A stretch of 64,000 nt of DNA, taken from the NCBI RefSeq assembly GCF_044704955.1, contig NC_091979.1, positions 54,436,001 through 54,500,000 of the forward strand, in the 5' to 3' direction. Origin of the DNA: Pristiophorus japonicus (lineage: Eukaryota). How positions within the stretch are numbered: the first letter of the stretch is position 1; every line of letters starts with the position of its first letter. The notes under the pieces are model-generated. The model had not been told where the DNA came from. It saw only the letters and a program-made list of their open reading frames with translations, and did not search any database. The position numbers and the translations under genes were made by a program. This document shows positions 11,309 to 41,257 of this stretch, in pieces.

Positions 11309-11375
11309 TGCGATGGGAATTAAACCCAGGTCAACTACTTGGAAGGCAACCATGCTTACCACTGCACCACCTTCA
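11309..11375 (-). pseudogene. tRNA-Gly(TCC) pseudogene
   Basis: Minus strand reads ggtggtgcagtggtaagcatggttgccTTCCAAgtagttgacctgggtttaattccc, colinear with vertebrate tRNA-Gly-TCC. T-loop and acceptor stem are decayed. Abuts a CR1 tail at 11213-11295. Confidence 0.75.
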
Positions 11376-20519: not shown

Positions 20520-23281
20520 AGTGGTTCATTCTCGGGTTGGCATTCAGTAACTAGTGGGGTGCTGCAGGGATCAGTGCTAGGACACCAGCTATTTACAATC
20601 TATATTAACGACTTAGGAACATAGAAAATAGGTGCAGGAGTAGGCCATTCTGCCCTTCGAACCTGCACCACCATTCAATAAGATCATGGCTGATCATTCA
20701 CCTCAGTACCCCTTTCCTGCTTTCTCTCCATACTCCTTGATCCCTTTAGCCGTAAGGACCATATCCAACTCCCTCTTGAATATATCTAACGAACTGGCAT
20801 CAACAACTCTCTGCGGAAGAGAATTCCACAGGTTAACAACTTTCTGAGTGAAGAAGTTTCTCCTCATCTCGGTCCTAAATGGCTTACCCTTATCCTTAGA
20901 CTGTGACCCCTGGTTCTGGACTCCCCCAACATCGGGAACATTCTTCCTGCATCTAACCTGTCCAGCCCCGTCAGAATTTTATATGTTTCTAAGAGATCCC
21001 CTCTCATTCATCTAAATTCCAGTGAATACAGGCCCAGTCTATCCAGTTTCTCCTTATATGTCAGTCCTGCCATCCCAGGAATCAGTCTGGTGAACCTTCG
21101 CTGCACTCCCTCAATAACAAGAACGTCCTTCCTCAGATTAGGAGACCAAAACTGAATGCAATATTCCAGGTGAGGCCTCATCAAGGCTCTGTATAGCTGC
21201 AGCAAGACCTCCCTGCTCCTATACTCAAATCCCCTCGCTATGAAGGCCAACATGTCATTTGCCGCCTTCACCGCCTGCTGCACCTGCATGCCAACCTTCA
21301 GTAACTAATGTACCATGACACCCAGGTCTCATTGCAACTCCCCTTTTCCTAATCTGCCGCCATTCAGATAATATTCTGCCTTCGTGTTTTTGCCACCAAA
21401 GTGGATAACCTCACATTTATCCACATTATGCTGCATCTGCCATGCATTTGCCCACTCACTAACCTGTCCAAGTCACCCTGCAGCCTCTTAGCATCCTCCT
21501 CACAGCTCACACTGCAACCCAGCTTACTGTCATCTGCAAACTTGGAGATATTACTCAATTCCTTCATCTAAATCATTGTAAATAGCTGGGGTCCCAGCAC
21601 TGAGCCCTGCGGCACCCCACTAGTCACTGCCTGCCATTCTGAAAAGGACCCGTTTATCCCGACTCTCTGCTTCCTGTCTGCCAACCAGTTCTCTATCCAC
21701 GTCAATACATTACCCCCCATATCATGTGCTTTAATTTTGCACACCAATCTCTTGTGTGGGACCTTGTCGAAAGCCTTTTGAAAGTCCAAATACACCACAT
21801 CCACTAGTTCTCCCTTGTCCACTCGACTAGTTACATCCTCAAAAAATTCTTGAAGATTTGTCAAGCATGATTTCCCTTTGATAAATCCATGCTGACTTGG
21901 ACCGATCCTGTCACTGCTTTCCAAATGCGCTGCTATTTTATCTTTAATAATTGATTCCAACATTTTCCCCACTACTGATGTCAGGCTAACCGGTCTATAA
22001 TTCCCCGTTTTCTCTCTCCCTCCTTTTTTAAAAAAGTGGTGTTATATTAGCTACTCTCCAGTCCATAGGAACTGATCCAGAGTCGATAGACTGTTGGAAA
22101 ATGATTACCAATGCATCCACTATTTCTAGGGCCACTTCCTTAAGTATTCTGGGATGCAGACTATCAGGCCCTGGGGATTTATCGGCCTTCAATCCCATCA
22201 ATTTCCCTAACAATTTCATGACTAATAAGGATTTCCTTCAGTCCCTCCTTCTCGCTAGACCCTCGGTCCCCTAGTATGTGTCTTCCTTCGTGAAGGTCGA
22301 GGTTCACCTCTCCGGGCACATTGGAAGAAGGGACTGAGTGTAATGTAGCCAAGTTTGCTGATCATACAAAGATGAGAGGAAAAGCAATGTGTGAGGAGGA
22401 TGCACAAAATCTGCAAAAGGACATAGACATGCTAAGTGAGTGGGCAGAAATTTGGCAGATGGAGTATAATGTTGGAAAATGTGAGGTCATGCACTTTGGT
22501 AGAAAAAAAATCAAAGAGCAAGTTATTATTTAAATGGAGAAAGATTGCAAAGTGCTGCAGTACAGCAGGACCTGGGGTTACTTGTGCATGAAACACAAAA
22601 GGATAGTATGCAGGTACAGCAAGTGATCAGGAAGGCCAATAGAATCTTGGCCTTTATTGCAATGGGGATGGAATATAAAAGCAGGAAAGTCTTGCTACAG
22701 TTGTACAGGGTATTGGTGAGGCCACACCTGAAATACTGCGTCCTGTTTTGGTTTCCATATTTACGAAAAGTTATACTTTTGCTTTGGGGGCAGTTCAGAG
22801 AAGGCTCACTCGGTTGATACTGGGGATGAGGGGGTTGACTTATGAGGAAAGGTTGAGTAGGTTGGGCCTCTACTCATTGGAATTCAGAAGAATGAGAGGT
22901 GATCTTATCGAAACATATAAGATTATGAGGGGGCTTGACAAGGTGGATGCAGAGAGGACGTTTGCACTGATGGGGGAGACCAGAACTAAAGGGCATGGTC
23001 TTAGAATAAGGGGCCGCCCATTTAAAATGAAATGAGGAGAAATTTCTTCTCTTTGAGGGTTGTAAATCTGTGGAATTCGCTGGCTCTTACAGAGCTGTCA
23101 AAGCTGGGACATTGAATAAATTTAAGACAGAAATGGACAGTTTCTTAAACGATAGGGTTATGGGGAGTGGGCCGGGAAGTGGAGCTGAGTCCATGATCAG
23201 ATCAGCTATGATCTTATTGAATGGCGGAGCAGGCTCGAGGGGCCGTATGGCCTACTACTCCTCCTATTTCTTATGTTCTTA
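20520..23281 (+). mobile_element. 5'-truncated CR1 split by an antisense CR1
   Basis: RT reads ...[10 protein letters not shown] at 20614 and resumes LEEGTECNVAKFAD at 22321; tail at 23281. Confidence 0.9.
20617..22295 (-). mobile_element. 5'-truncated CR1
   Basis: RT peptides in ORFs 21568-21972, 22028-22219 and 21008-21289 (QHGFIKGKSCLTNL, YLDFQKAFDKVPH). Confidence 0.93.
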
Positions 23282-23283
23282 AG

Positions 23284-23557
23284 TGTGCACACTAGGTCAG
23301 TGCAGCAGAGCAGGTCTCCAGTCGTCTTGGTTGACACTTGCCACTGGACCAAGACCTAGCTCTGTCAAATCTATGTGGTGGCTGGTGTGCAACGGCCATC
23401 ACGTTAAAAAAAATCCGCGCACAGACATCTTCCACCCCTTCAACATGTAGTTCGGGACCTGGAATATTAGGTCCTTCATTGAAACACCTGTGAACTCATC
23501 CTTTTTTGGCGTGGAAGCAATTCATCCTTGATACGAGGGACTGCCTATGATGATGAT
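23284..23557 (+). mobile_element. SINE-like repeat with (TGA)n tail
   Basis: Homologous to 15293-15551. Confidence 0.7.
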
Positions 23558-23609: not shown

Positions 23610-23819
23610 TGTTACGTCTTGAATAAAGAGTCAGACTAGATACTGCAAGCTCAAAGTAAGATGTGACCATAGTCCTTTACTACAGATCTGAGTGCCTCTC
23701 CAGCCTGTGAGGCCTCCTTATATACAGGTGCTTCCAAGGGATTATGGGATCCCTTGGAACTCCAGGGGATAAGTCCTCTGGTGGTTAGACATGGTATTTA
23801 CAGGTTTACATACAAAACA
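23610..23819 (-). repeat. 3' LTR
   Basis: Direct repeat of 28641-28832; adjacent to the polypurine tract. Confidence 0.93.
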
Positions 23820-25374
23820 ACACCCTCCCCCCCCCCCCAAAATAAAAGTCAATAGTATAACTATTTACAATGTGAGTCGATCTGGGGCCTTCCTTTCCCT
23901 GGTTGATCGTCTCTGTGCAAATGATGGTTTTGGTGAGTCATTTGTTCGGCCCTTGCTGGGCTGCTGTGCAGCTGGCCTTGCTGGGCTGCTGGATGTGATG
24001 AGTCCTGCTAGGCTGCTGCGGGTGATGGGTTCTGCTTTGTGATCAACCGCTGGGTCGGATGCCACTTGTGTGTGTTGGAGGGTCGAAAAAGGTGGAGTCT
24101 ATTGTGGATTGTTCTGTATAGTCTGTAAATCTGAGTTTGGTTTGGTCCAAGTGTTTCCTGCAGATGAGTCAATTTGAGAGTTTGACCACACTCTACTCCC
24201 CTCTTTGGCCAAAACAGTGCCAGGAAGCCACTTGGGACCTTGTCCACAGTTCAACACAAATACAGGATCATTTATCTCAATTTCATGTGACACATTTGCG
24301 CGATCATGATATGTATTCTGTTGAAGCCGCCTGCTCTCTACCTGTTCATGTAGATCAGGGTGGACTAACGAGAGCCTTGTCTTTTCATGAGCAGTTCAGC
24401 GGGAGGGGCCCCAGTGAGCGAGTGGGGTCTTGTGTGGTAACTGAGCAGGTCTCGGGATAAGCGAGTCTGCAGTGAGCCTTCAGTTACCCTTTTCAAGCTC
24501 TACTTGATTATTTGAACTGCTCGTTCTGCCTGACCATTGGACGCTGGTTTAAACGGGGCAGATGTGACATGTTTGATCCCATTGCGGGTCATGAACTCCT
24601 TGAACTCGGCACTGGTAAAGCACGGCCCATTGTCACTTACAAGGACATCAGGCAGGCCGTGCGTGGCAAACATGGCCCATAGGCTTTCAATGGTGGCAGC
24701 GGACGTGCTTGCCAACATTATCACACGTTCAATCCATTTGGAGTACGCATCTACAACCACTAAGAACATTATTCGCAAGAATGGGCCTGCATAGCCGACA
24801 TGGACCCTGGACCACGGTTTGGAGGGCCAGGACCATAAACTTAGTGGCACCTCCCTGGGTGCAATGCTTAACTGTGAACATGTATTACATTTGTGCACGC
24901 AGGACTCTTAAGTCTGCATCGATACCGGGCCACCGCACGTGGAATCTGGCTATTCCTTTCATCACTACGATGCCTGGGTGGATGCTGTGGAGATCACCAA
25001 TGAAAGTGTCTCTGCCCTTTTTTGGCACCACTACCCGATTACCCCATAGGAGGCAGTCTGCCTGTATAGACATTTTATCTTTGCGCCGCTGGTACGACTT
25101 TATTTTTTCCTGCATCTCTAACGGGACACGAGACCAACTCCCGTGGAACACAGTTTTTTTAACTAAGGACAGTAAGGGGTCCTGGCTCGTCCAGGTTCTA
25201 ATCTGTCGGGCGGTAACAGGTTTTTGCTCACTCTCGAATGTTTCTGTTACCATAACTAAATCTGCAAGCTGTGCCATCTCCACCCCGGTGGGGGGCAATG
25301 GCAGCCTACTGAGAGCATCGGCACAATTTTCTGTGCCTGGCCAGTGGTGGATGGCATAGTTGTATGTGGACAAC

Positions 25375-25737
25375 GTCGCTTCTCGGCCTTTTGGCTAAGA
25401 TCATGCGTAACTGACCTGACAGGGGAGTAGCCACCATGACCTCCGGGTGGTTCTCCCTGGATCAGGAAGGTATATGCTTGCTTTTTTGGAAACAGGAGGT
25501 GGGTGGGGTGGCTTGACCCATCCACCTCCACGGAGGTGTGTGGGGGACCTGACCCATCCACCTCCATGGCACGAACCTGGTATTGCAGTACTTCCAGGAA
25601 CGGTGCAGTGGCTCTAGGCCTTTTGGCTAAGAGCATTGGCGCAGAGTGATCCTTGGCGTGTGCAAGGTGACCTCTGGCGTTTGTGATTTGACAAAGAATT
25701 GGAACGATTGGCTACGAATTTCAAAAAAAAAAAAAAA
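25375..25737 (+). mobile_element. Chimeric U2/U1 snRNA-derived SINE-like element, copy 1
   Basis: U2 5' end (tcgcttctcggccttttggctaagatca), U1-like segment (actgacctgacaggggag..ccatga..ggtggttctccc), U2 3' half (tttttgga..acctggtattgcagtacttccaggaacggtgca), second degenerate U2 5' end, unique tail, A15. Confidence 0.85.
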
Positions 25738-25754
25738 CGTGAGCACCCATCTCC

Positions 25755-26099
25755 CCTTTTGGCTAAGATCATGCGTAACTGACCTGACAGGGGAGTAACC
25801 ATGACCCCAAAGTGGTTCTCCCTGGATCAGGACGGTGGTTCTCCTATGCTTTTTGGAAATAGGAGGTGGGTGGGGTGGCTTGACCCATCCACCTCCACGG
25901 AGGTGTGTGGGGGGCCTGACCCATCCACCTCCATGGCACGAACCTGGTATTGCAGTACTTCCAGGAACGGTGCATTTGGCTCTAGGCCTTTTGGCTAAGA
26001 GCATTGGCGCAGAGTGATCCTTGATGTGTGCAAGGTGACCTCTGGCGTTTGTGATTTGACAAAGAATTGGAAAGATTGGCTACGAATTTAAAAAAAAAA
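25755..26099 (+). mobile_element. Chimeric U2/U1 snRNA-derived SINE-like element, copy 2
   Basis: Same architecture, 5'-truncated by ~12 nt, with poly(A). Flanked by an 18-bp TSD aacgtgagcacccatctc (25736-25753) / aacgtgagaacccatctc (26098-26115). Confidence 0.85.
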
Positions 26100-28640
26100 C
26101 GTGAGAACCCATCTCTGGATGTGGGCCGATGCATTCATTTTTATCCACTTGCTTTCAGAAAAGAGGGATATAAGCAAATTTGAGCTCGAACAGATAATGA
26201 TGCATTTTCTTTACCCCGTAAACACATGCTAAGGCTTCTTTTTCGATCATATTGTAGGCCCTTTCGGCTTTAGATAGACTTCTGGATGCATAAGCAACTG
26301 GTTGCAATTTCCCAAACTCATTAGCTTGTTGCAATACACACCCGACCCTGTACGTCAACGTGTCATATGGTAGTACCAAATGCTTACATGGATCGTACAA
26401 CACAAGTAATTTGTTTGAATATAACAGCTTCCTAGCTTTCTCAAAGGCATTTTCTTGGCTTTTGCCCCATACCCATTCATCTCCTTTACGCAGTAAAGAG
26501 TGCAGGGGTTCTAACAATGTGCTAAGACCCGGTAAGGGGTTTCCAAAATAATTCAGGAATCCTAGAAATGACCGCAGCTCCATTACGTTCTGTGGTCTCG
26601 GTACGTTCTTGATTTCCTTCGTCTTCGAATCGGTGGGCCTGATGCTGTCTGCCGCGATTCTTCTCCCCAGGAACTGCACTTCAGGCACCAGGAAAACGCA
26701 CTTCGAGTGTTTTATCCTGAGCCCCACACGATTGAGCCGACTAAGAACCTCCTCCAGGTTCTGCAGCTGCTCGACGGTGTCCTGACCTGTAACCAAGATG
26801 TCGTCCTGGAAGACCACGGTGCGCGGGACCGACTTCAACAAGCTTTCCATGTTCCTCTGGAATATCGCCGCGGCCGATCGAATCCCAAACGGGCATCTGT
26901 TGTAAATGAAGAGACCTTTGTGGGTGTTGATGCAGGTGAGGCCTTTCGATGATTCCTCCAGCTCCTGCGTCATGTAGGCCGAGGTCAAGTCCAGCTTCGT
27001 GAACGTTTTCCCTCCCGCCAGCGTCACAAATAGGTCGTCTGCCTTCAGTAGCAGGTATTGATCCTGCAGTGAGGAACGATTAATAGTTACTTGGTAATCA
27101 CCACAGATTCTGATGGTGCCATCTCCCTGGAACAATCGGACTGACCCATTCATTGAATTTGATCGGGGAAATTATGCCCTCTCATTGCAGCTGTCCAGCT
27201 CGATCTCCATCTTCTCTCTCGTCATGTAAGGTATCGTTCTCGCCTTGTGATAGATGGGTGCGCCCCCGGAATCAAATGGATCTGCACTTTTGCTCCTTGG
27301 AACTTCCCGATGCCTGGTTTGAACAGCGAGGGGAACTTGTTTAGGACCTGGGCACATTAGGTGTTGTCGATGGATGAAAGCGCTTCGATCTCGTCCCAGT
27401 TCCAGCGTATCTTTCCCAGCCAGCTCCTGCCGAACAGCGAGGGGCCATTGCCCGGTACCATCCAGAGTGGTAACTCGTGCACCGCCCCATCGTAGGATAC
27501 CTTTACGGTAGCACTGCCGATTACGTGAGTCAGTTCCTTTGTGTACGTTCTCAGTTTAATATGAATGGGAGTCAGTTCTGGCCTTGAAGCCTTGCAAAAA
27601 CCACAATTTATCGAAAATCTTTTTGCTCATTATTGACGGGCTTGCACCCGTGTCCAGCTCCATCGACACAGGGAGTCCATTTAATTCAACCTTCAGCATT
27701 ATCGGGGGACACTTTTGTGGTAAATGTGTGCACCCCATATACCTCTGCCTCCTCGATCTGAGGCTCTGGTTCGTCGTGATCCACCGTGGATCTATCCTTC
27801 TCTGCAACATGGTGGTTTGCAGGATTAGCAGGGTTTGCAACTCGCCTGCACATACATTGGAGATGTCCCATTGTTCCACAGGCCTTGCAAACGTATGCTT
27901 TCAAGCGGCATGAATGGAAACGATTATCACCCCCGCAGCGCCAACAAGGTGTTAATGGCCTTGTATTCACCACCCTTGTTGGTGGACTCTGCGGACGTGC
28001 AACTGCAGGCGTGTAAGTCCTGACTTGTACATTTAGATTCTTTGTTCACAGTACTTGCAGCGGCCTTCGTGTGCTGAGAAATTTGTTTGGTATTTTCACT
28101 GGTGGCGATAAACGCCTGGGCTATCGCCATGGCTTTACTCAAGGTTGGGGTCTCTACAGTCAAAAGTTTGCGAAGTATCACTTCATGGCCAATGCCAAGT
28201 ACAAAGAAGTCCCTGAGCATGTGCTCCAAGTGTTCTTCAAATTCGCAATGTCCTGCAAGGCGCCTTAGCTCGGCGACGTAGCTCGCCACTTCCTGGCCTT
28301 CAGACCTCTTGTACATGTAGAACCAATACCTCGCCATCAGAATGCTTTCCTTCGGGTTTAGATGCTCCTGGACCTGTGTGCACAACTCATCGTACGACTT
28401 GTCTGTGGGTTTCGCTGGAGCGAGCAGGTTTTTATGAGGCCATATGTTGGCGCCCCGCAGACGGTGAGGAGGATCACCCTTCGTTTGGCAACGTTCGCTT
28501 CTCCTTCCAGCTCGTTGGCCACGAAGTATTGGTCGAGTCGCTCCACGAAGGTTTCCCAATCACCTCCCTCAGAAAATTTCTCCAGGATGCCCACGGTTCT
28601 CTGCATTGTTGTGGTTCGTCATTTGTATCTCATCGCCAGT

Positions 28641-28832
28641 TGTTATGTCTTGAATAAAGAGTCAGAGTAAGGTGTGACCGTAGTCCTTTATTACAGATCT
28701 CAGAGTGCCTCTCCAGCCTGTGAGGCCTCCTTATATACAAGTGCTCCCAAGGGATTGTGGGATCCCTTGGGACTCCAGGGGATAAGCCCTCTGGTGGTTA
28801 GACATGGTATTTACAGGTTTACATAAATAACA
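28641..28832 (-). repeat. 5' LTR
   Basis: Direct repeat of 23610-23819 lacking ~20 bp; adjacent to the PBS. Confidence 0.93.
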
Positions 28833-30669
28833 GTAAGACCATAAGAAATAAGAAATACGGCCCCTCAAGCCTGCTCCGCCATTCAATAAGATCATGGCTG
28901 ATCATCGACCTCACCACTTTCCTGCCCGATCTCCATATCCCTTGATTCCACTCGAGTCCAAAAATCTATCTATCTCAGCCTTGAATATACAGAGACTCAG
29001 CATCCACAGCCCTCAGGGGCAGAGAATTCCAAAGGTTCTCAACCCTCTATGAAGAAATTCCTCCTCATCTCTGCCTTAAATGGCATACCCCTCATCCTGA
29101 GACTGTGCCCCCCAATTCTAGACACTCCAGCCTCTCAGCATCTACCCTGTTAATCCCCGTCAGAATCTTGTGTGTCTCAATGAAATCAACTTTCATTCTT
29201 CTAAACTCCAGAGAATATAGGTCCATTCTACACAGTCTCTTATCATAAGACAGCCCTCTCATCCCAGGAATCAAACCAGTAAACCTTTGTTGCACCGCCT
29301 CCAAGGCAAGTATATCCTTCCTTAGATAAAGAGACCAAATCTGTGCACAGTACTCCAGGTATGGTCTCACCAAAGTCCTGTATAATTGTAGCAAGACGTC
29401 CTTACTCTTATATTCCAATCCCCTTGCAATAAAGGACAATGTGTCATTTGCCTTCCTTATTGCTTGCTGTATCTGCATGTTAGCTTTCCTCTGAACATCA
29501 TCATTTAAAAGTTTCTCACCGTTTAAAAAATATTCTGTTTTTCTATTCTTCCAACCAAAGTGAATCACCACACATTTCCCTACATTATATTCCCATCTGC
29601 CACCTTACTGCCTACTCACTTAGACTACCTATATCCCTTTGCATACTCTTTGTGTTCTCTTCACAGTTTACTGTCCCACCTAGCGGTCCCTTCATCTAGG
29701 CCATTAATATAGATTGTAAATAGCTGAGGCCCCAGCACTGATCCTTGCGGCACCCCACTAGTTACAGCCTGCCAATCTGAAAAAGACCCATTTTATCCCT
29801 ACTCTCTGTTTTCTGTCCATTAACCAATCCTCTATCCATGTTAATATCTTACCTCCAATCGCATGAGCCCACATCTTGTGTAATAACCTTTTATGTGGCA
29901 CCTTATCGAATGCCTTTTAGAAATCCAAATATACTACATCCACTGGTTCCTCTTTGTCTTACCCTGCTAGTTACATCCTCAAAAAATTCAAATAAATTTG
30001 TCAAACTTGATTTCCCTTTCATAAAATCATGTTATGATTTTGTAAGTGCCCTAATACCACTTCCTTAACAATTGATTCCAGTATTTTCCCGACTAATGTC
30101 AGGCTAACTGGCCTGTTGTTCTCTGTTTTCTCTCTCCCTTCTTTCTTGAATAGTGGTGTTACATTTGCTACCTTCCAATCTGCTGGGAGTGTTACAGAAT
30201 TTAGGGAATTTTGGAATATCAAACGAATGCATCCACTGTCTCTGCAACTACCTCTTTTAGAACTCTAGGATGTAGGCTGTAGGTCCCTGGGGATTCGTGG
30301 TGAGTCGGAGAGGCTTGGGCGGTGTGTCAGAGAGGCCAATAAAAAGTCCCAAAGCGTCGCTGAGGCTCGGGAGTTCATGGTGAGTCGGAGAGGCTCGGGA
30401 GGTGCGTCGGAGAGGCCTATAAAAAGGCCCAATGCGTCGCTGAGGCTCGGGAGTTTGTGGTGAGTCGGAGAGGCTCGGGAGGTGTGTCAGAGAGGCATGC
30501 TTGTGCAGCTACAGGGAGAAGGCAAAAAAGTAGAAAGAAATTGAAAGGTGACATCACAGCCAAGGGGGTAAGTGATTAGCTGGTGATTGGTAAGTAGTTT
30601 CTCTTTTTCTTTATCAGTAAGTAACCTTTTAACATTGTTGCCCAATTAAGTTAATCCAAGGGTTAAGTC

Positions 30670-32029: not shown

Positions 32030-34837
32030 TAAAACACTCTACTAAACGCATGCAGCATTCGAAATAAAGTAAATGAGTTGACGGCACAAATCATTACAAA
32101 TGGGTATGATTTGGTGTCCATTACAGAAACGTGGTTGCAGGGGGGCCAAGACTGGGAATTAAACATACAGGGGTATCTGACGATTCGGAAAGATAGACAA
32201 GAAGGGAAAGGAGGTGGGGTAGCTCTGTTAATAAAGGATGATATCAGGGCAGTTGTGAGAGACGATATTGGCTCTAATGAACAAAATGTTGAATCATTGT
32301 GGGTGGAGATTAGAGATAGTAAGGGGAACAAGTCACTGGTGGGCGTAGTTTATAGGCCCCCAAATAATAACTTCATGGTGGGGCAGGCAATAATCGAGGG
32401 AATAATGGAGGCATGTGAAAAAGGAACGGCAGTAATCATGGGGGATTTTAACCTACATATCGATTGGTCAAATCAAATCGCACGGGGTAGCCTTGAGGAG
32501 GAATTCATAGAAGGCAGACGGGATTGTTTCTTCGAACAGTATGTTACAGAACCTACAAGGGAGCAAGCTATCTTAAATCTGGTCCTGTGTAATGAGACAG
32601 GAATAATAAACGATCTCCGAGTAAAAGATCCTCTCGGAATGAGTGATCACAGTATGGTTGAATTTGTAATACAGATTGAGGGTGAGGAAGTAGTGTCTCA
32701 AACGAGCGTACTATGCTTAAACAAAGGGGACTACAGTGGGATGAGGGCAGAGTTGGCTAAAGTAGACTGGAAACACAGACTAAACGGTGGCACAATTGAG
32801 GAACAGTGGCGGACTTTTAAGGAGTTCTTTCATAGTGCTCAACAAAAATATATTCCAGTGAAAAAGAAGGGCGGTAAGAGAAGGGATAACCAGCTGTGGA
32901 TAACGAAGGAAATAAGGGAGAGTATCAAATTAAAAACCAATGCGTATAAGGTGGCCAAGGCTAGTGGGAAACTAGAAGATTGGGAACATTTTAAACGACA
33001 GCAAAGAGTGACTAAGAAAGCAATAAAGAAAGGAAAGATAGATTACGAAGGTAAACTTGCGCAAAACATAAAAACAGATAGTAAAAGTTTTTACAGATAT
33101 ATAAAACGGAAAAGAGTGACTAAAGTAAATGTTGGTCCCTTAGAAGATGAGAAGGGGGATTTAATAATGGGAAATGTGGAAATGGCTGAGACCTTAAACA
33201 ATTATTTTGCTTCGGTCTTCACAGTGGAATACACAAAAACCATGCCAAAAATTGCTGGTCATGGGAATGTGGAAAGGGAGGACCTTGAGATCATCACTAT
33301 CACTAGGGGGGTAGTGCTGGATAGGCTAATGGGCCTCAAGGTAGACAAGTCCCTTGGCCCTGATGAAATGCATCCCAGGGTATTAAAAGAGATGGCGGAA
33401 GTTATAGCAGATGCATTCGTTATAATCTACCAAAATTCTCTCGACTCTGGGGAGGTACCAGCGGATTGGAAAGCAGCTAATGTAACACCTCTGTTTAAAA
33501 AAGGGGGCAGACAAAAGGCAGGTAACTATAGGCCGGTTAGTTTAACATCTGTAGTGGGGAAAATGCTTGAAGCTATCATTAAGGAAGAAATAGCGGGACA
33601 TCTCGATAGGAATAGTGCAATCAAGCAGATGCAACATGGATTCATGAAAGGGAAATCATGTTTAACTAATTTACTGGAATTCTTTGAGGATATAACGAGC
33701 ATGCTGGATAGAGGTGTACCGATGGATGTGGTGTATTTAGATTTCCAAAAGGCATTCGATAAGGTGCCACACAAAAGGTTACTGCAGAAGATAAAGATAC
33801 ACGGAGTCAGAGGAAATGTATTAGCATGGATCGAGAATTGGCTGGCTAACAGAAAGCAGAGAGTCGGGATAAATAGGTCCTTTTCGAGTTGGAAATCGGT
33901 GGTTAGTGGTGTGCCACAGGGATTGGTGCTGGGACCACAACTGTTTACAATATACATAGATGACCTGGAAGAGGGGACAGAGTATAGTGCAACAAAATTT
34001 GCAGATGAGACAAAGATTAGTGGGAATGTGGGTTGTATAGAGGACACAGAGAGGCTGCAAAGAGATTTATATAGGTTAAGCGAATAGGCTAAGGTTTGGC
34101 AGATGGAATACAATGTCGGAAAATGTGAGGTCATCCACCTTGGAAAAAAGAACAGTAAAAGGGAATATTATTTGAATGGGGAGAAATTACAACATGCTGC
34201 GGTGCAGAGGGACCTGGGGGTCCTTGTGCATGAATCCCAAAAAGTTAGTTTGTAGGTGCAGCAGGTAATCAGGAAGGCGAATGGAATGTTGGCCTTCATT
34301 GCGAGAGGGATGGAGTACAAAAGCAGGGAGGTCCTGCTGCAACTGTACAGGGTATTGGTGAGGCCGCACCTGGAGTACTGCGTGCAGTTTTGGTCACCTT
34401 TCTTAAGGAAGGATATACTAGCTTTGGAGGGGGTACAGAGTCGATTCACTAGGCTGATTCCGGAGATGAGAGGGTTACCTTATGATGATAGATTGAGTAG
34501 ACTGGGTCTTTACTTGCTGGAGTTCAGAAGGATGAGGGGTGATCTTATAGAAACATTTAAAATAATGAAAGGGATAGACAAGATCGAGGCAGAGAGGTTG
34601 TTTCCACTGGTCGGGGAGACTAGAACTAGGGGGCACAGCCTCAAAATACGGGGGAGCCAATTTAAAACTGAGTTGAGAAGGAATTTCTTCTCCCAGAGGG
34701 TTGTGAATCTGTGGAATTCTCTGCCCAAGGAAGCAGTTGAGGCTAGCTCATTGAATGTATTCAAATCACAGATGGATAGATTTTTAACCAATAAGGGAAT
34801 TGAGGGTTACAGGGAGCGGGCGGGTAAGTGGAGCTGA
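32030..34837 (+). pseudogene. CR1 ORF2 (APE endonuclease and reverse transcriptase) with in-frame stops
   Basis: 669-aa open stretch 32078-34087 (ITETW, GDFN, SDH, QHGF, DFQKAFD, FADE); TAG stops at ~34085 and ~34253; same frame continues to 34837. Confidence 0.93.
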
Positions 34838-34931
34838 GTCCACAGCCAGATCAGCCATGATCTTGTTGAATGGCGGAGCAGGCTCGAGGGGCTAGATGGC
34901 CTACTCCTGTTCCTAATTCTTATGTTCTTAT

Positions 34932-36235
34932 GATCAGTCGAAGTCAGCATGGATTTATGAAAGGGAAATCATGCTTGACAAATCTTCAGGAATTTTTTGA
35001 GGATGTAACTAGTAGAGTGGACAAGGGAGAACCAGTGGATGTGGTGTATTTGGACTTTCAAAAGGCCTTTGACAAGGTCCCACATAAGAGATTGGTGTGC
35101 AAAATGAAAGCACATGGTATTGGGAGTAATGTACTGATGTGAATAGAGAATTGGTTGGCAGACAGGAAGCAGAGACTCGGGATAAACAGGTCCTTTTCGG
35201 AATGGGAGGCAGTGACTAGTGGAGTGCCGCAAGGCTCAGTGCTGGGTTCCCAGCTCTTTACAATATACATTAATGATTTGGATGAAGGAATTGAGTGTAA
35301 TATCTCCAAGTTTTCAGATGACACTCAACTGGGTGGCGGTGTGAGCTGTGAGGAGGATGCTCAGAGGCTGCAGGGTGACTTGGACAGGTTAGGTGAGTGG
35401 GCAAATGCATGGTCGATGTCGTATAATGTGGATAAATGTGAAGTTATTCACTTTGGGGGCAAAAACACGGAGACAGAATATTATCTGAATGGCGGCAGAT
35501 TAGGAAAAGGGGAAGTGCAACGAGACCTGGGTATCCTGGTTCATCAGTCATTGAAAGTTGGCATGCAGGTACAGCAAGTGGATAAGAAGGCAAATGGCAT
35601 GTTGGCCTTCATAGCTAGGGGATTTGAGTATCGGAGCAGGGAGATCTTTCTGCAATTGCACAGGGTCTTGGTGAGGCCTCACCTGGAATATTGTGTTCAG
35701 TTTTAGTCTCCTAATCTGAGGAAGGACGTTCTTGCTATTGAGGGAGTGCAGCGAAGGTTCACCAGACTGATTCCAGGGATGGTTGTACGGACATATGAGG
35801 AGAGACTGGATCAACTGGGCCTTTATGCACTCGAGTTCAGAAAGATGAGAGGGGATCTCATAGAAACGTATAAGATTCTGACGGGATGGGACAGGTTAGA
35901 TGCGGGAAAAATTTTTCCGATGTTGGGGAAGCCCAGAACCAGGGGACACAGTCATAGGATAAGGGGTAGGCCATTTAGGACTGAGATGAGGAGAAACTTC
36001 TTCATTCAGAGAGTTGTTAACCTGTGGGATTTCCTGCTACAGAGAGTTGTTGATGCCAGTTCATTGGATATATTCAAGAGGGAGTTAGATATGGCCCTTA
36101 CGGCTAAAGGGAACAAGTGGTATGGAGAGAAAGCAGGAAAGGGGTACGGAGGTGAATGATCAGCCATGATCTTATTGAATGGTGGTGCAGGCTCGAAGGG
36201 CCGAATGGCCTACTCCTGCACCTATTTTCTATGTT
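34932..36235 (+). mobile_element. 5'-truncated CR1 of another subfamily, directly after the previous tail
   Basis: RT peptides in ORFs 34870-35142, 35155-35706 and 35746-36159; ttttctatg tail. Confidence 0.92.
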
Positions 36236-41125: not shown

Positions 41126-41257
41126 NNNNNNNNNNNNNNNNNNNNNNNNNNNNNNNNNNNNNNNNNNNNNNNNNNNNNNNNNNNNNNNNNNNNNNNNNNN
41201 NNNNNNNNNNNNNNNNNNNNNNNNNNNNNNNNNNNNNNNNNNNNNNNNNNNNNNNNN
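41126..41257. other. Assembly gap
   Basis: Run of N. Confidence 0.99.

What the first reader, a model, noticed from the sequence alone, without database searches (positions are those of the whole stretch)
25371..26115. Both snRNA-SINE copies hit the same nucleotide of Gypsy pol: candidate site-specific parasite of an LTR retrotransposon
Seen: each poly(A) is followed by the same target, cgtgag(c/a)acccatctc. Copy 2 has an 18-bp TSD and copy 1 only a ~5-bp overlap (aacgt). The copies differ by several indels in the U1 part, which argues against local duplication. Removing them restores the pol peptide ASAHIQRWVLTLSTYNY between RNase H and integrase. Known: tandem re-insertion at one nick is typical of target-primed reverse transcription by sequence-specific Tx1-clade LINEs, and crocodilian SINEU prefers a Mariner target via Tx1 elements. 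Inference: a Tx1-like LINE and this SINE target a conserved coding motif of Mag-type Gypsy elements, disabling them.
Basis: partly seen in the sequence, partly recalled or inferred. Interest (0 to 1): 0.88.

Follow-up and report, generated by a model that had tools for sequence, protein, structure and literature searches.

The report
Two snRNA-SINE copies in one Gypsy site
Two separate copies of a short mobile element built from spliceosomal U2/U1 RNA pieces landed at the same nucleotide of an old, already broken Gypsy retrotransposon in a shark-like genome. This fits a jumping-gene enzyme that re-cuts a preferred site, but I could not test whether the family aims at Gypsy elements in general, and untested scan notes suggest it does not.

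Summary
Two poly(A)-tailed U2-U1-U2-U2 mosaic retroposons (25377-25737 and 25755-26099, + strand) lie head to tail. Each is followed by cgtgag(c/a)acccatctc, and they sit inside the pol gene of a minus-strand Gypsy element (23611-28832). The Gypsy flanks abut cleanly at the motif QRWVLT|LSTYNY.

The copies differ mostly in the U1 module (17/80 against 8/241 positions, p=2.5e-6), and copy 2 is 5'-truncated. They are therefore two insertions, not a local duplication. Tandem copies with a target duplication between them are what Kojima 2015 describes for crocodilian SINEU-3, mobilised by site-specific Tx1 LINEs.

The wider claim, a dedicated parasite that disables Gypsy elements, was not tested:
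- The protein and metagenome routes found no other copies.
- A second hit in the A-tail of the first copy would give the same picture.
- This Gypsy copy carries its own frameshift and stops.
- Notes from this scan (unchecked) place the same SINE family in CR1 LINEs, a satellite, its own kind and beside a U2-headed Tx1 LINE, never in Gypsy.
- Tx1 families that prefer LTR retrotransposons are already published.

The scan had noted this family, and this very stretch, before. Modest interest.

The parts
23611..28832 (-). Ty3/Gypsy LTR retrotransposon, the host of the insertions. It is about 4.5 kb without the SINEs, and its frames are degenerate.
   Evidence: LTR pair found. Pfam finds aspartyl protease, RVT_1, RT_RNaseH_2/RT_RNaseH and rve in that order on the minus strand. 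Possible 5-bp duplication ataag / gtaag.
23611..23819 (-). LTR at the low-coordinate end (the 3' LTR in element sense). It starts tgtta and ends aaca, and carries a 20-bp indel relative to the other LTR.
   Evidence: 11 mismatches in 189 aligned positions plus 2 indels against 28641-28832.
28641..28832 (-). LTR at the high-coordinate end (the 5' LTR in element sense).
26155..27153 (-). Open reading frame for the RT and RNase H part of pol. It ends in a stop and frameshift about 10 codons before the insertion site.
   Evidence: RVT_1 2.7e-21, RT_RNaseH_2 5.2e-26; frames.
24500..25370 (-). Pol segment downstream of the site: the STYNY...ADALSRLP linker, the integrase zinc-binding region and the integrase core. 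Stops interrupt it.
   Evidence: rve 5.3e-15 in 24500-24898; translation with stops; homologues carry PF17917 and PF17921.
25372..25376 (+). aacgt, the short duplicated target left of copy 1 (3-5 nt; the t may instead be U2 position 2).
   Evidence: Read directly.
25377..25737 (+). SINE copy 1, full length. Modules: U2 positions ~3-29, U1 5' part, U2 3' half with an internal duplication, U2 ~7-29 again, a ~90-nt unique 3' domain, then A15.
   Evidence: Rfam U2 57.5 bits over 25375-25613. Alignment.
25736..25753 (+). Middle copy of the Gypsy target, (aa)cgtgagcacccatctc. This is the upstream half of copy 2's target-site duplication.
25755..26099 (+). SINE copy 2. It is 5'-truncated by about 10 nt, carries a different U1-module variant and ends in A10. 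The tctc microhomology lies at its 5' junction.
   Evidence: (U2 34.6 bits, U1 21.9 bits).
26098..26115 (+). Right copy of the target, (aa)cgtgagaacccatctc, which continues into Gypsy pol.

Best explanation
Two separate RNA copies of a SINEU-like retroposon (a U2/U1 snRNA mosaic with a unique 3' domain and a poly(A) tail) were inserted one after the other by target-primed reverse transcription. Both used the same bottom-strand nick (5'-...GCTCACGTT^GTCCAC-3' on the minus strand) in a resident, ageing Gypsy copy.

The most likely enzyme is a Tx1-type LINE (L1 superfamily) whose endonuclease prefers certain sequences. The recognised bases lie downstream of the nick, so they survive, and are even duplicated by, each insertion. 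The site can then be cut again, giving a head-to-tail pair with the target between the copies. On this reading the Gypsy pol motif is one landing pad among several, not the family's dedicated target, and any harm to Gypsy is incidental.

Shown: two independent insertions, one shared 3' junction, a clean target, and a nick context that is not T-rich.
Inferred: the Tx1-type partner, the sequence preference, and the order of events.
For: - Both copies share the same 3' junction, and a 16-18-nt duplication lies between them.
- Differences concentrate in the U1 module (p=2.5e-6), copy 2 is 5'-truncated, and its 5' junction shows microhomology. Together these indicate separate retrotransposition events from different source variants.
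- The Gypsy flanks abut with no loss against homologues.
- The nick context CACGTT^GTCC is not the TTTT^AA type cut by generic L1 endonucleases (the L1 site is from established knowledge).
- Kojima 2015 reports 'tandem SINEU-3 insertions sandwiching a TSD', made by sequential insertion through site-specific Tx1-Mar LINEs. The same paper reports snRNA heads on Tx1 LINEs and two Tx1 families that prefer LTR retrotransposons.
- Unchecked leads from this scan: a 5.6-kb Tx1-clade LINE with the same U2 head, interleaved with four SINE copies; further tandem pairs of the family in a CR1 LINE and in its own kind; and other Tx1 families in this genome stacked at single sites.
Against: - Only one locus was examined, and the two hits are not independent. 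An insertion into the A-tail of the first copy by an unspecific enzyme gives the same structure.
- No partner LINE and no other copy of the SINE or of this Gypsy family lies in the window.
- The two target duplications differ in length (3-5 nt against 16-18 nt), whereas SINEU-3 mostly shows one fixed duplication.
- The order of the two insertions cannot be determined.
Confidence: 0.5

Rival explanations
1. Generic insertion plus an A-tail effect. The first SINE copy landed here by chance. The second was primed in the T-run opposite the first copy's poly(A) tail, as Alu elements often land in older Alu tails. This mimics 'the same nucleotide' without any sequence-specific enzyme.
For: If copy 1 came first, a nick anywhere in its A15 tract with a top-strand cut after catctc yields exactly the observed A-run + cgtgag...catctc duplication. 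A-tail insertion is well known for L1-driven SINEs (established knowledge). Per scan notes, stacking occurs in several different host repeats, which would fit a tail-driven effect that does not depend on the target.
Against: Whichever copy came first used a nick context that is not T-rich (CACGTT^GTCC). An enzyme drawn to T-runs is therefore not indicated. Copy 1 keeps the longer tail (A15 against A10). If copy 2 came first, copy 1 hit a place with no A-run. The share of stacked loci among those the scan noted seems high for a chance tail effect, but that count is unchecked.
Confidence: 0.28
2. A dedicated Tx1-like LINE and this SINE are specific for this conserved motif of Gypsy pol. Most copies sit there, and the insertions serve to knock out Gypsy elements.
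For: There is a double hit at one nucleotide with a duplication between the copies. The target lies in a motif conserved at protein level among Ty3/Gypsy elements (QRWALTL..Y.Y). There is precedent for Tx1 families that prefer LTR retrotransposons.
Against: Scan notes, which I did not check, put other copies of this SINE family in CR1 LINEs (one single copy, one tandem pair), a satellite, another repeat, its own kind and beside a Tx1 LINE. No note mentions Gypsy. This Gypsy copy has its own frameshift and stops and about 6% LTR divergence, so disabling is not shown. A DNA-reading enzyme would see only one Gypsy family, not a protein motif.
Confidence: 0.1
3. Hitch-hiking. The double insertion happened once in an ancestral Gypsy copy, and this locus is a later retrotransposed copy of that already-filled Gypsy.
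For: Non-autonomous, broken LTR elements can be copied in trans. The Gypsy is short (4.5 kb without the SINEs).
Against: Outside the U1 module the two SINE copies differ by 2.5% (6/239), against 5.8% (11/189) between the LTRs. That is the opposite of what is expected if the SINEs were older than this integration, though the difference is not significant (p=0.13). No second filled Gypsy copy was seen.
Confidence: 0.05
4. Local duplication. One insertion was doubled by unequal crossing-over or replication slippage between its target duplications.
For: The arrangement is head to tail with the repeated target in between.
Against: Copy 1 has 10 more 5' nucleotides than copy 2 and lacks the full duplication on its left. 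The U1 modules differ by 12 substitutions and 5 gap columns in 78 nt, while the rest is 97.5% identical. The tails also differ.
Confidence: 0.03

Closest known systems
SINEU-3 / SINEU-1 / SINEU-2 with Tx1-Mar LINEs of crocodilians (Kojima 2015, PMC4494074)
   Same: Short poly(A) retroposons whose heads come from U2 and/or U1 snRNA, with snRNA pieces added repeatedly at the 5' end. Tandem copies with a ~16-nt target duplication between them, inside another transposon and often in antisense orientation. The proposed driver is a site-preferring Tx1-clade LINE that may carry the same snRNA head.
   Different: The host lineage is a shark-like fish, not a crocodilian. The target here is a Gypsy pol coding motif, not Mariner-N4_AMi. 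The module order is U2-U1-U2-U2. No sequence comparison with the crocodilian consensus was possible. Target preference is documented there with hundreds of copies and here with a single locus.
Tx1-8_Crp and Tx1-4_AMi (Kojima 2015)
   Same: [quoted passage not shown] Tx1-4_AMi also has a U1-derived head.
   Different: The paper text I read gives no insertion position inside those LTR elements. No LINE of this kind is present in the window.
Keno (Tx1 clade) and Utopia, the U2-gene-targeting LINEs (PMC4640811)
   Same: They explain how a LINE or SINE can acquire a U2 head. They make precise 3' junctions and occasionally insert in tandem.
   Different: Their target is the U2 gene itself, with downstream U2 starting at nt 39. 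Here the U2 fragments end at about nt 29 and the target is not U2. I saw no convincing similarity between the Gypsy target and the U2 site.
Alu-in-Alu-tail insertions driven by mammalian L1
   Same: Head-to-tail SINE pairs in which the second copy's duplication starts in the first copy's A-tail.
   Different: The L1 endonuclease cuts TTTT^AA. The underlying site here is CACGTT^GTCC, and the SINE has a long unique 3' domain typical of LINE-tail-dependent SINEs.

Membership tests
SINEU (snRNA-headed SINE) | 5' head derived from U1 or U2 snRNA | tested here: met
   Rfam U2 scores 57.5 bits (gathering score 46) on copy 1 and 34.6 bits on copy 2. The U1 match is weak at 21.9 bits against a cut-off of 69.5. 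A second U2 7-26 fragment is present.
SINEU (snRNA-headed SINE) | Short non-coding retroposon with a 3' tail and target-site duplication | tested here: met
   The copies are 361 and 345 nt, with A15 and A10 tails and duplications of 3-5 and 16-18 nt.
SINEU (snRNA-headed SINE) | Dispersed multi-copy family | tested here: inconclusive
   Only the two adjacent copies lie in this window. Other copies are known only from unchecked scan notes.
SINEU (snRNA-headed SINE) | Sequence relationship to the published crocodilian SINEU consensus sequences | not testable with these tools
   No Repbase sequences are on hand.
Elements mobilised by target-specific Tx1-clade LINEs | More than 20% of copies flanked by one kind of sequence (criterion of Kojima 2015) | not testable with these tools
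No copies were found in the protein or metagenome collections.
Elements mobilised by target-specific Tx1-clade LINEs | Precise shared 3' junction, and tandem copies with the target duplication between them | tested here: met
   Both A-runs are followed by cgtgag.acccatctc. This rests on n=2 at one locus, so the two cases are not independent.
Elements mobilised by target-specific Tx1-clade LINEs | Partner LINE with the same 3' tail and the same target | not tested
   BLAST of the SINE against the window finds only the two copies. A candidate LINE is known only from scan note s1-877533.
Ty3/Gypsy LTR retrotransposon (the target) | LTR pair, and pol order protease - RT - RNase H - integrase | tested here: met
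   LTRs. Pfam order on the minus strand.
Ty3/Gypsy LTR retrotransposon (the target) | Membership of the Mag lineage | not tested
   No lineage-level phylogeny was made. The best protein hits are 40-48% identical unnamed fragments, including mussel and coral entries.
Generic L1-type (TT/AAAA) insertion | T-rich bottom-strand nick site | tested here: not met
   The underlying Gypsy site reads CACGTT^GTCC on the nicked strand. For the later of the two insertions, an A-tail site cannot be excluded.

The most novel reading that the evidence does not exclude
A shark Tx1-type LINE and its snRNA-mosaic SINE are truly specific for one nucleotide position in the RNase H-integrase junction of a Gypsy family. 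That would make them a retroelement living on the coding sequence of another retroelement. Their filled and empty sites would give a natural record of conflict between a LINE/SINE pair and an LTR element.
Probability: 0.12. Interest if true: 0.6.

Novelty: new member of a known kind. Interest (0 to 1): 0.33.

Why it matters
If the family, or one of its LINE partners, really prefers this Gypsy site, that would extend two things from crocodilians to cartilaginous fish: the SINEU/Tx1 system, and the habit of Tx1 elements of using other transposons as safe landing pads. It would also provide a defined 16-18-nt target for testing how Tx1 endonucleases read DNA.

As it stands, the locus is a clean textbook example of repeated target-primed insertion at one nick. 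It adds a data point for a shark SINEU-like family that I did not find in the paper library. It does not show targeting of Gypsy elements.

Tried and rejected
1. Read laying. I also withheld the equivalent snRNA-like parts of copy 2, and used only the unique 3' domain and the Gypsy flanks.
2. Protein route to other Gypsy copies. The 161-aa piece just downstream of the site found 73 relatives, the best at 48% identity. This Gypsy family and this genome are therefore not in that collection, and filled or empty sites could not be fetched.
3. Metagenome scans with two pieces of the SINE 3' domain. The first found nothing. The second gave one hit, L001, which is an unrelated chance match.
4. Search of the scan's notes by sequence with the 3' junction. 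It was blank.
5. Comparison of the Gypsy target by eye with the U2 site used by Keno and Utopia (nt 39 onward) and with the crocodilian SINEU-3 duplication AGGTTCCCATCAGCAT. The only overlap is the hexamer CCCATC, at a different distance from the nick. I estimate the chance of such a shared hexamer at about 3-4%, after the fact, so I do not count it as evidence.
6. Dating. SINE-pair divergence against LTR divergence trends towards younger SINEs but is not significant (p=0.13).
7. Paper searches for shark SINEU or shark Tx1 literature found nothing relevant.
8. I built no joined or repaired pol frame. The two flanks were translated separately.
Full report
**What is there.** Window 25377-25737 and 25755-26099 (+ strand) hold two copies of a ~360-nt poly(A)-tailed retroposon. 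Rfam places a full-length but internally rearranged U2 snRNA on each copy. Copy 1 scores 57.5 bits, above the gathering score of 46, and copy 2 scores 34.6 bits. There is also a weak U1 match (21.9 bits) and a second short U2 fragment covering positions 7-26. The module order is:
- U2 about 3-29
- the 5' part of U1
- the U2 3' half (Sm site to 3' end) with an internal duplication
- U2 about 7-29 again
- a unique ~90-nt 3' domain
- the A-run

So the head is U2 first, and not only U1 as the title suggests. An Rfam 'Prion_pknot' hit on the minus strand is an artefact of the duplicated ccatggaggtggatggg motif.

**The host element.** The pair sits antisense inside a Ty3/Gypsy element on the minus strand, 23611-28832.
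- The LTRs are about 192-209 bp (tgtta...aaca) and differ at 11 of 189 aligned positions plus two indels.
- Pfam finds protease, RVT_1, RT_RNaseH_2/RT_RNaseH and rve in the canonical order.
- The right flank translates to ...ASAHIQRWVLT. The left flank translates to (L)STYNYAIHHWPGTENCADALSRLP....
- Against intact homologues (...SRMQRWALTLLGYEYDLLYRPG...ADALSRLP), the two flanks abut with nothing missing. Those homologues carry PF17917 (RT_RNaseH) before the site and PF17921 (integrase zinc-binding) after it.

However, this pol is broken independently of the SINEs. The RNase H frame ends in a stop and frameshift at about 26155-26160, some ten codons upstream of the site, and the integrase part has several stops. 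I translated the flanks separately and built no joined frame.

**The junctions.** Each A-run is followed by cgtgag(c/a)acccatctc, at 25738-25753 and 26100-26115.
- Copy 2 is bracketed by this 16-nt string, or 18 nt with two ambiguous A's, with one mismatch.
- Copy 1 is bracketed only by aacgt against (aa)cgt.
- Copy 2 lacks the first ~10 nt of the element, and its 5' junction shows tctc microhomology plus one extra c.

The nick that primed reverse transcription lies on the minus strand within ...GCTCACGTT^GTCCAC..., give or take two nucleotides. This is not the T-rich TTTT^AA site of generic L1 endonucleases (the L1 site is from established knowledge).

**Independent events.** The copies are 93% identical overall, but the differences are far from even. 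There are 17 of 80 columns in the U1 module against 8 of 241 elsewhere (p=2.5e-6). Add the different 5' ends, tails and duplication lengths, and local duplication is excluded. The two copies came from different source variants.

Hitch-hiking on an already-filled Gypsy is unlikely but not excluded. Outside the U1 module the SINE pair differs by 2.5%, against 5.8% between the LTRs. That is the wrong direction for older SINEs, but p=0.13.

**What the double hit does and does not show.** Either order of events reproduces the structure.
- If copy 2 came first, copy 1 later hit the same nucleotide in the upstream duplicate. That place has no A-run, so this order needs sequence preference.
- If copy 1 came first, copy 2 either re-used the intact target or was primed anywhere in copy 1's A15 tract. 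The outcomes are identical.

The 'same nucleotide twice' is therefore not two independent observations. What favours a sequence-preferring enzyme is the nick context of the underlying site, which is not T-rich, and the close match to the literature. Kojima 2015 describes 'tandem SINEU-3 insertions ... sandwiching a TSD', made by sequential insertion. That paper also reports a 16-nt duplication, Tx1-Mar LINEs sharing the target, and Tx1 LINEs carrying U1 or U2 heads.

**The genome-wide claim.** I could not test it.
- The look-up of sequencing runs found six runs of one organism, kept as contigs only.
- The protein collection has no close relative of this Gypsy, with 48% the best identity.
- Two metagenome scans with the unique 3' domain gave nothing and one chance hit.
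- The window holds no other SINE copy, target-like site or Gypsy copy.

The only wider information is the scan's own notes, which are unchecked. The same SINE family is reported in these settings:
- a CR1-like LINE (s1-874486)
- a tandem pair in a CR1 LINE (s1-874479)
- a satellite (s1-877522)
- another repeat (s1-876458)
- head to tail in its own kind (s1-877412, s1-877220)
- four copies interleaved with a 5.6-kb Tx1-clade LINE with the same U2 head (s1-877516, s1-877533)

No note mentions Gypsy. Other Tx1 families of this genome are reported stacked at single sites in CR1 and in a solo LTR. If these leads hold, Gypsy pol is not the family's general target. Stacking in several kinds of host repeat is then the family's habit.

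**Most likely mechanism.** A Tx1-type LINE supplies an endonuclease with a sequence preference that reads bases downstream of the nick. Each insertion leaves those bases in place, and the target duplication copies them, so the site can be cut again. The snRNA-mosaic RNA is copied in trans through its LINE-like 3' domain and A-tail. The Gypsy motif is one landing pad among several. 'Disabling' of Gypsy is not shown, because the hit copy has its own lesions and diverged LTRs.

**Comparison and novelty.** The system works like crocodilian SINEU with Tx1-Mar. Membership in SINEU by architecture is met: snRNA head, tail and duplication. Homology to the published consensus sequences and the copy number could not be tested. 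I found no paper on shark SINEU.

[quoted passage not shown] Even if true, the idea would be a new variant of a known habit. What is actually established here is a new member of a known kind. The scan had already noted this family on other DNA, and this same stretch as s1-878437.

Noticed in passing
window 25518-25569 and 25885-25936 (minus strand): Rfam 'Prion pseudoknot' hits (31.2 bits, below the gathering score of 39). They are caused by the duplicated ccatggaggtggatggg motif in the U2-like stem region of each SINE copy, so they are false positives.
   Followed up: partly
window 25738-25753 compared with the paper PMC4494074: The target duplication here (cgtgagcacccatctc) and the crocodilian SINEU-3 duplication (AGGTTCCCATCAGCAT) share the hexamer CCCATC, at different distances from the nick. 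ACCCATC also occurs twice inside each SINE copy. This is probably chance (roughly 3-4% for the hexamer by my estimate), but it is worth checking once many flanks are available.
   Followed up: partly
window 32078-35706 (+): A LINE with a 669-aa ORF carrying an AP-endonuclease domain and RVT_1, followed by an internal ~1.3-kb duplication (33632-33931 against 34945-35244, and similar pairs). Related, more diverged LINE fragments flank the Gypsy at 20611-23284 and 28855-30295. I did not assign its clade (CR1/L2 or L1/Tx1).
   Followed up: partly
window 30289-30528: Three tandem units of 80 bp (88% and 61% identical to the first), just outside the Gypsy element.
   Followed up: no
window 11312-11370 (-): A tRNA-like match just above the Rfam gathering score (31.1 bits against 29). 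It may be the head of a tRNA-derived SINE.
   Followed up: no
window 41126-41257: A run of 132 N (an assembly gap or masked stretch). I left it as it is.
   Followed up: no
window 25404/25405 and 25636/25637 (and 26004/26005 in copy 2): Both U2 5' fragments inside the SINE stop at the same U2 position (about nt 29, after GA(T/G)CA). According to PMC4640811, U2-targeting LINEs leave downstream U2 starting at nt 39. The statement in earlier scan notes that the modules are joined 'exactly at the U2 position that U2-targeting elements cut' may therefore need rechecking.
   Followed up: partly
L001 2532-2551: Metagenome contig VFSW01073095.1 matches 20 nt of the SINE 3' domain exactly, but it is otherwise unrelated coding-like sequence. 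This is a chance hit.
   Followed up: yes
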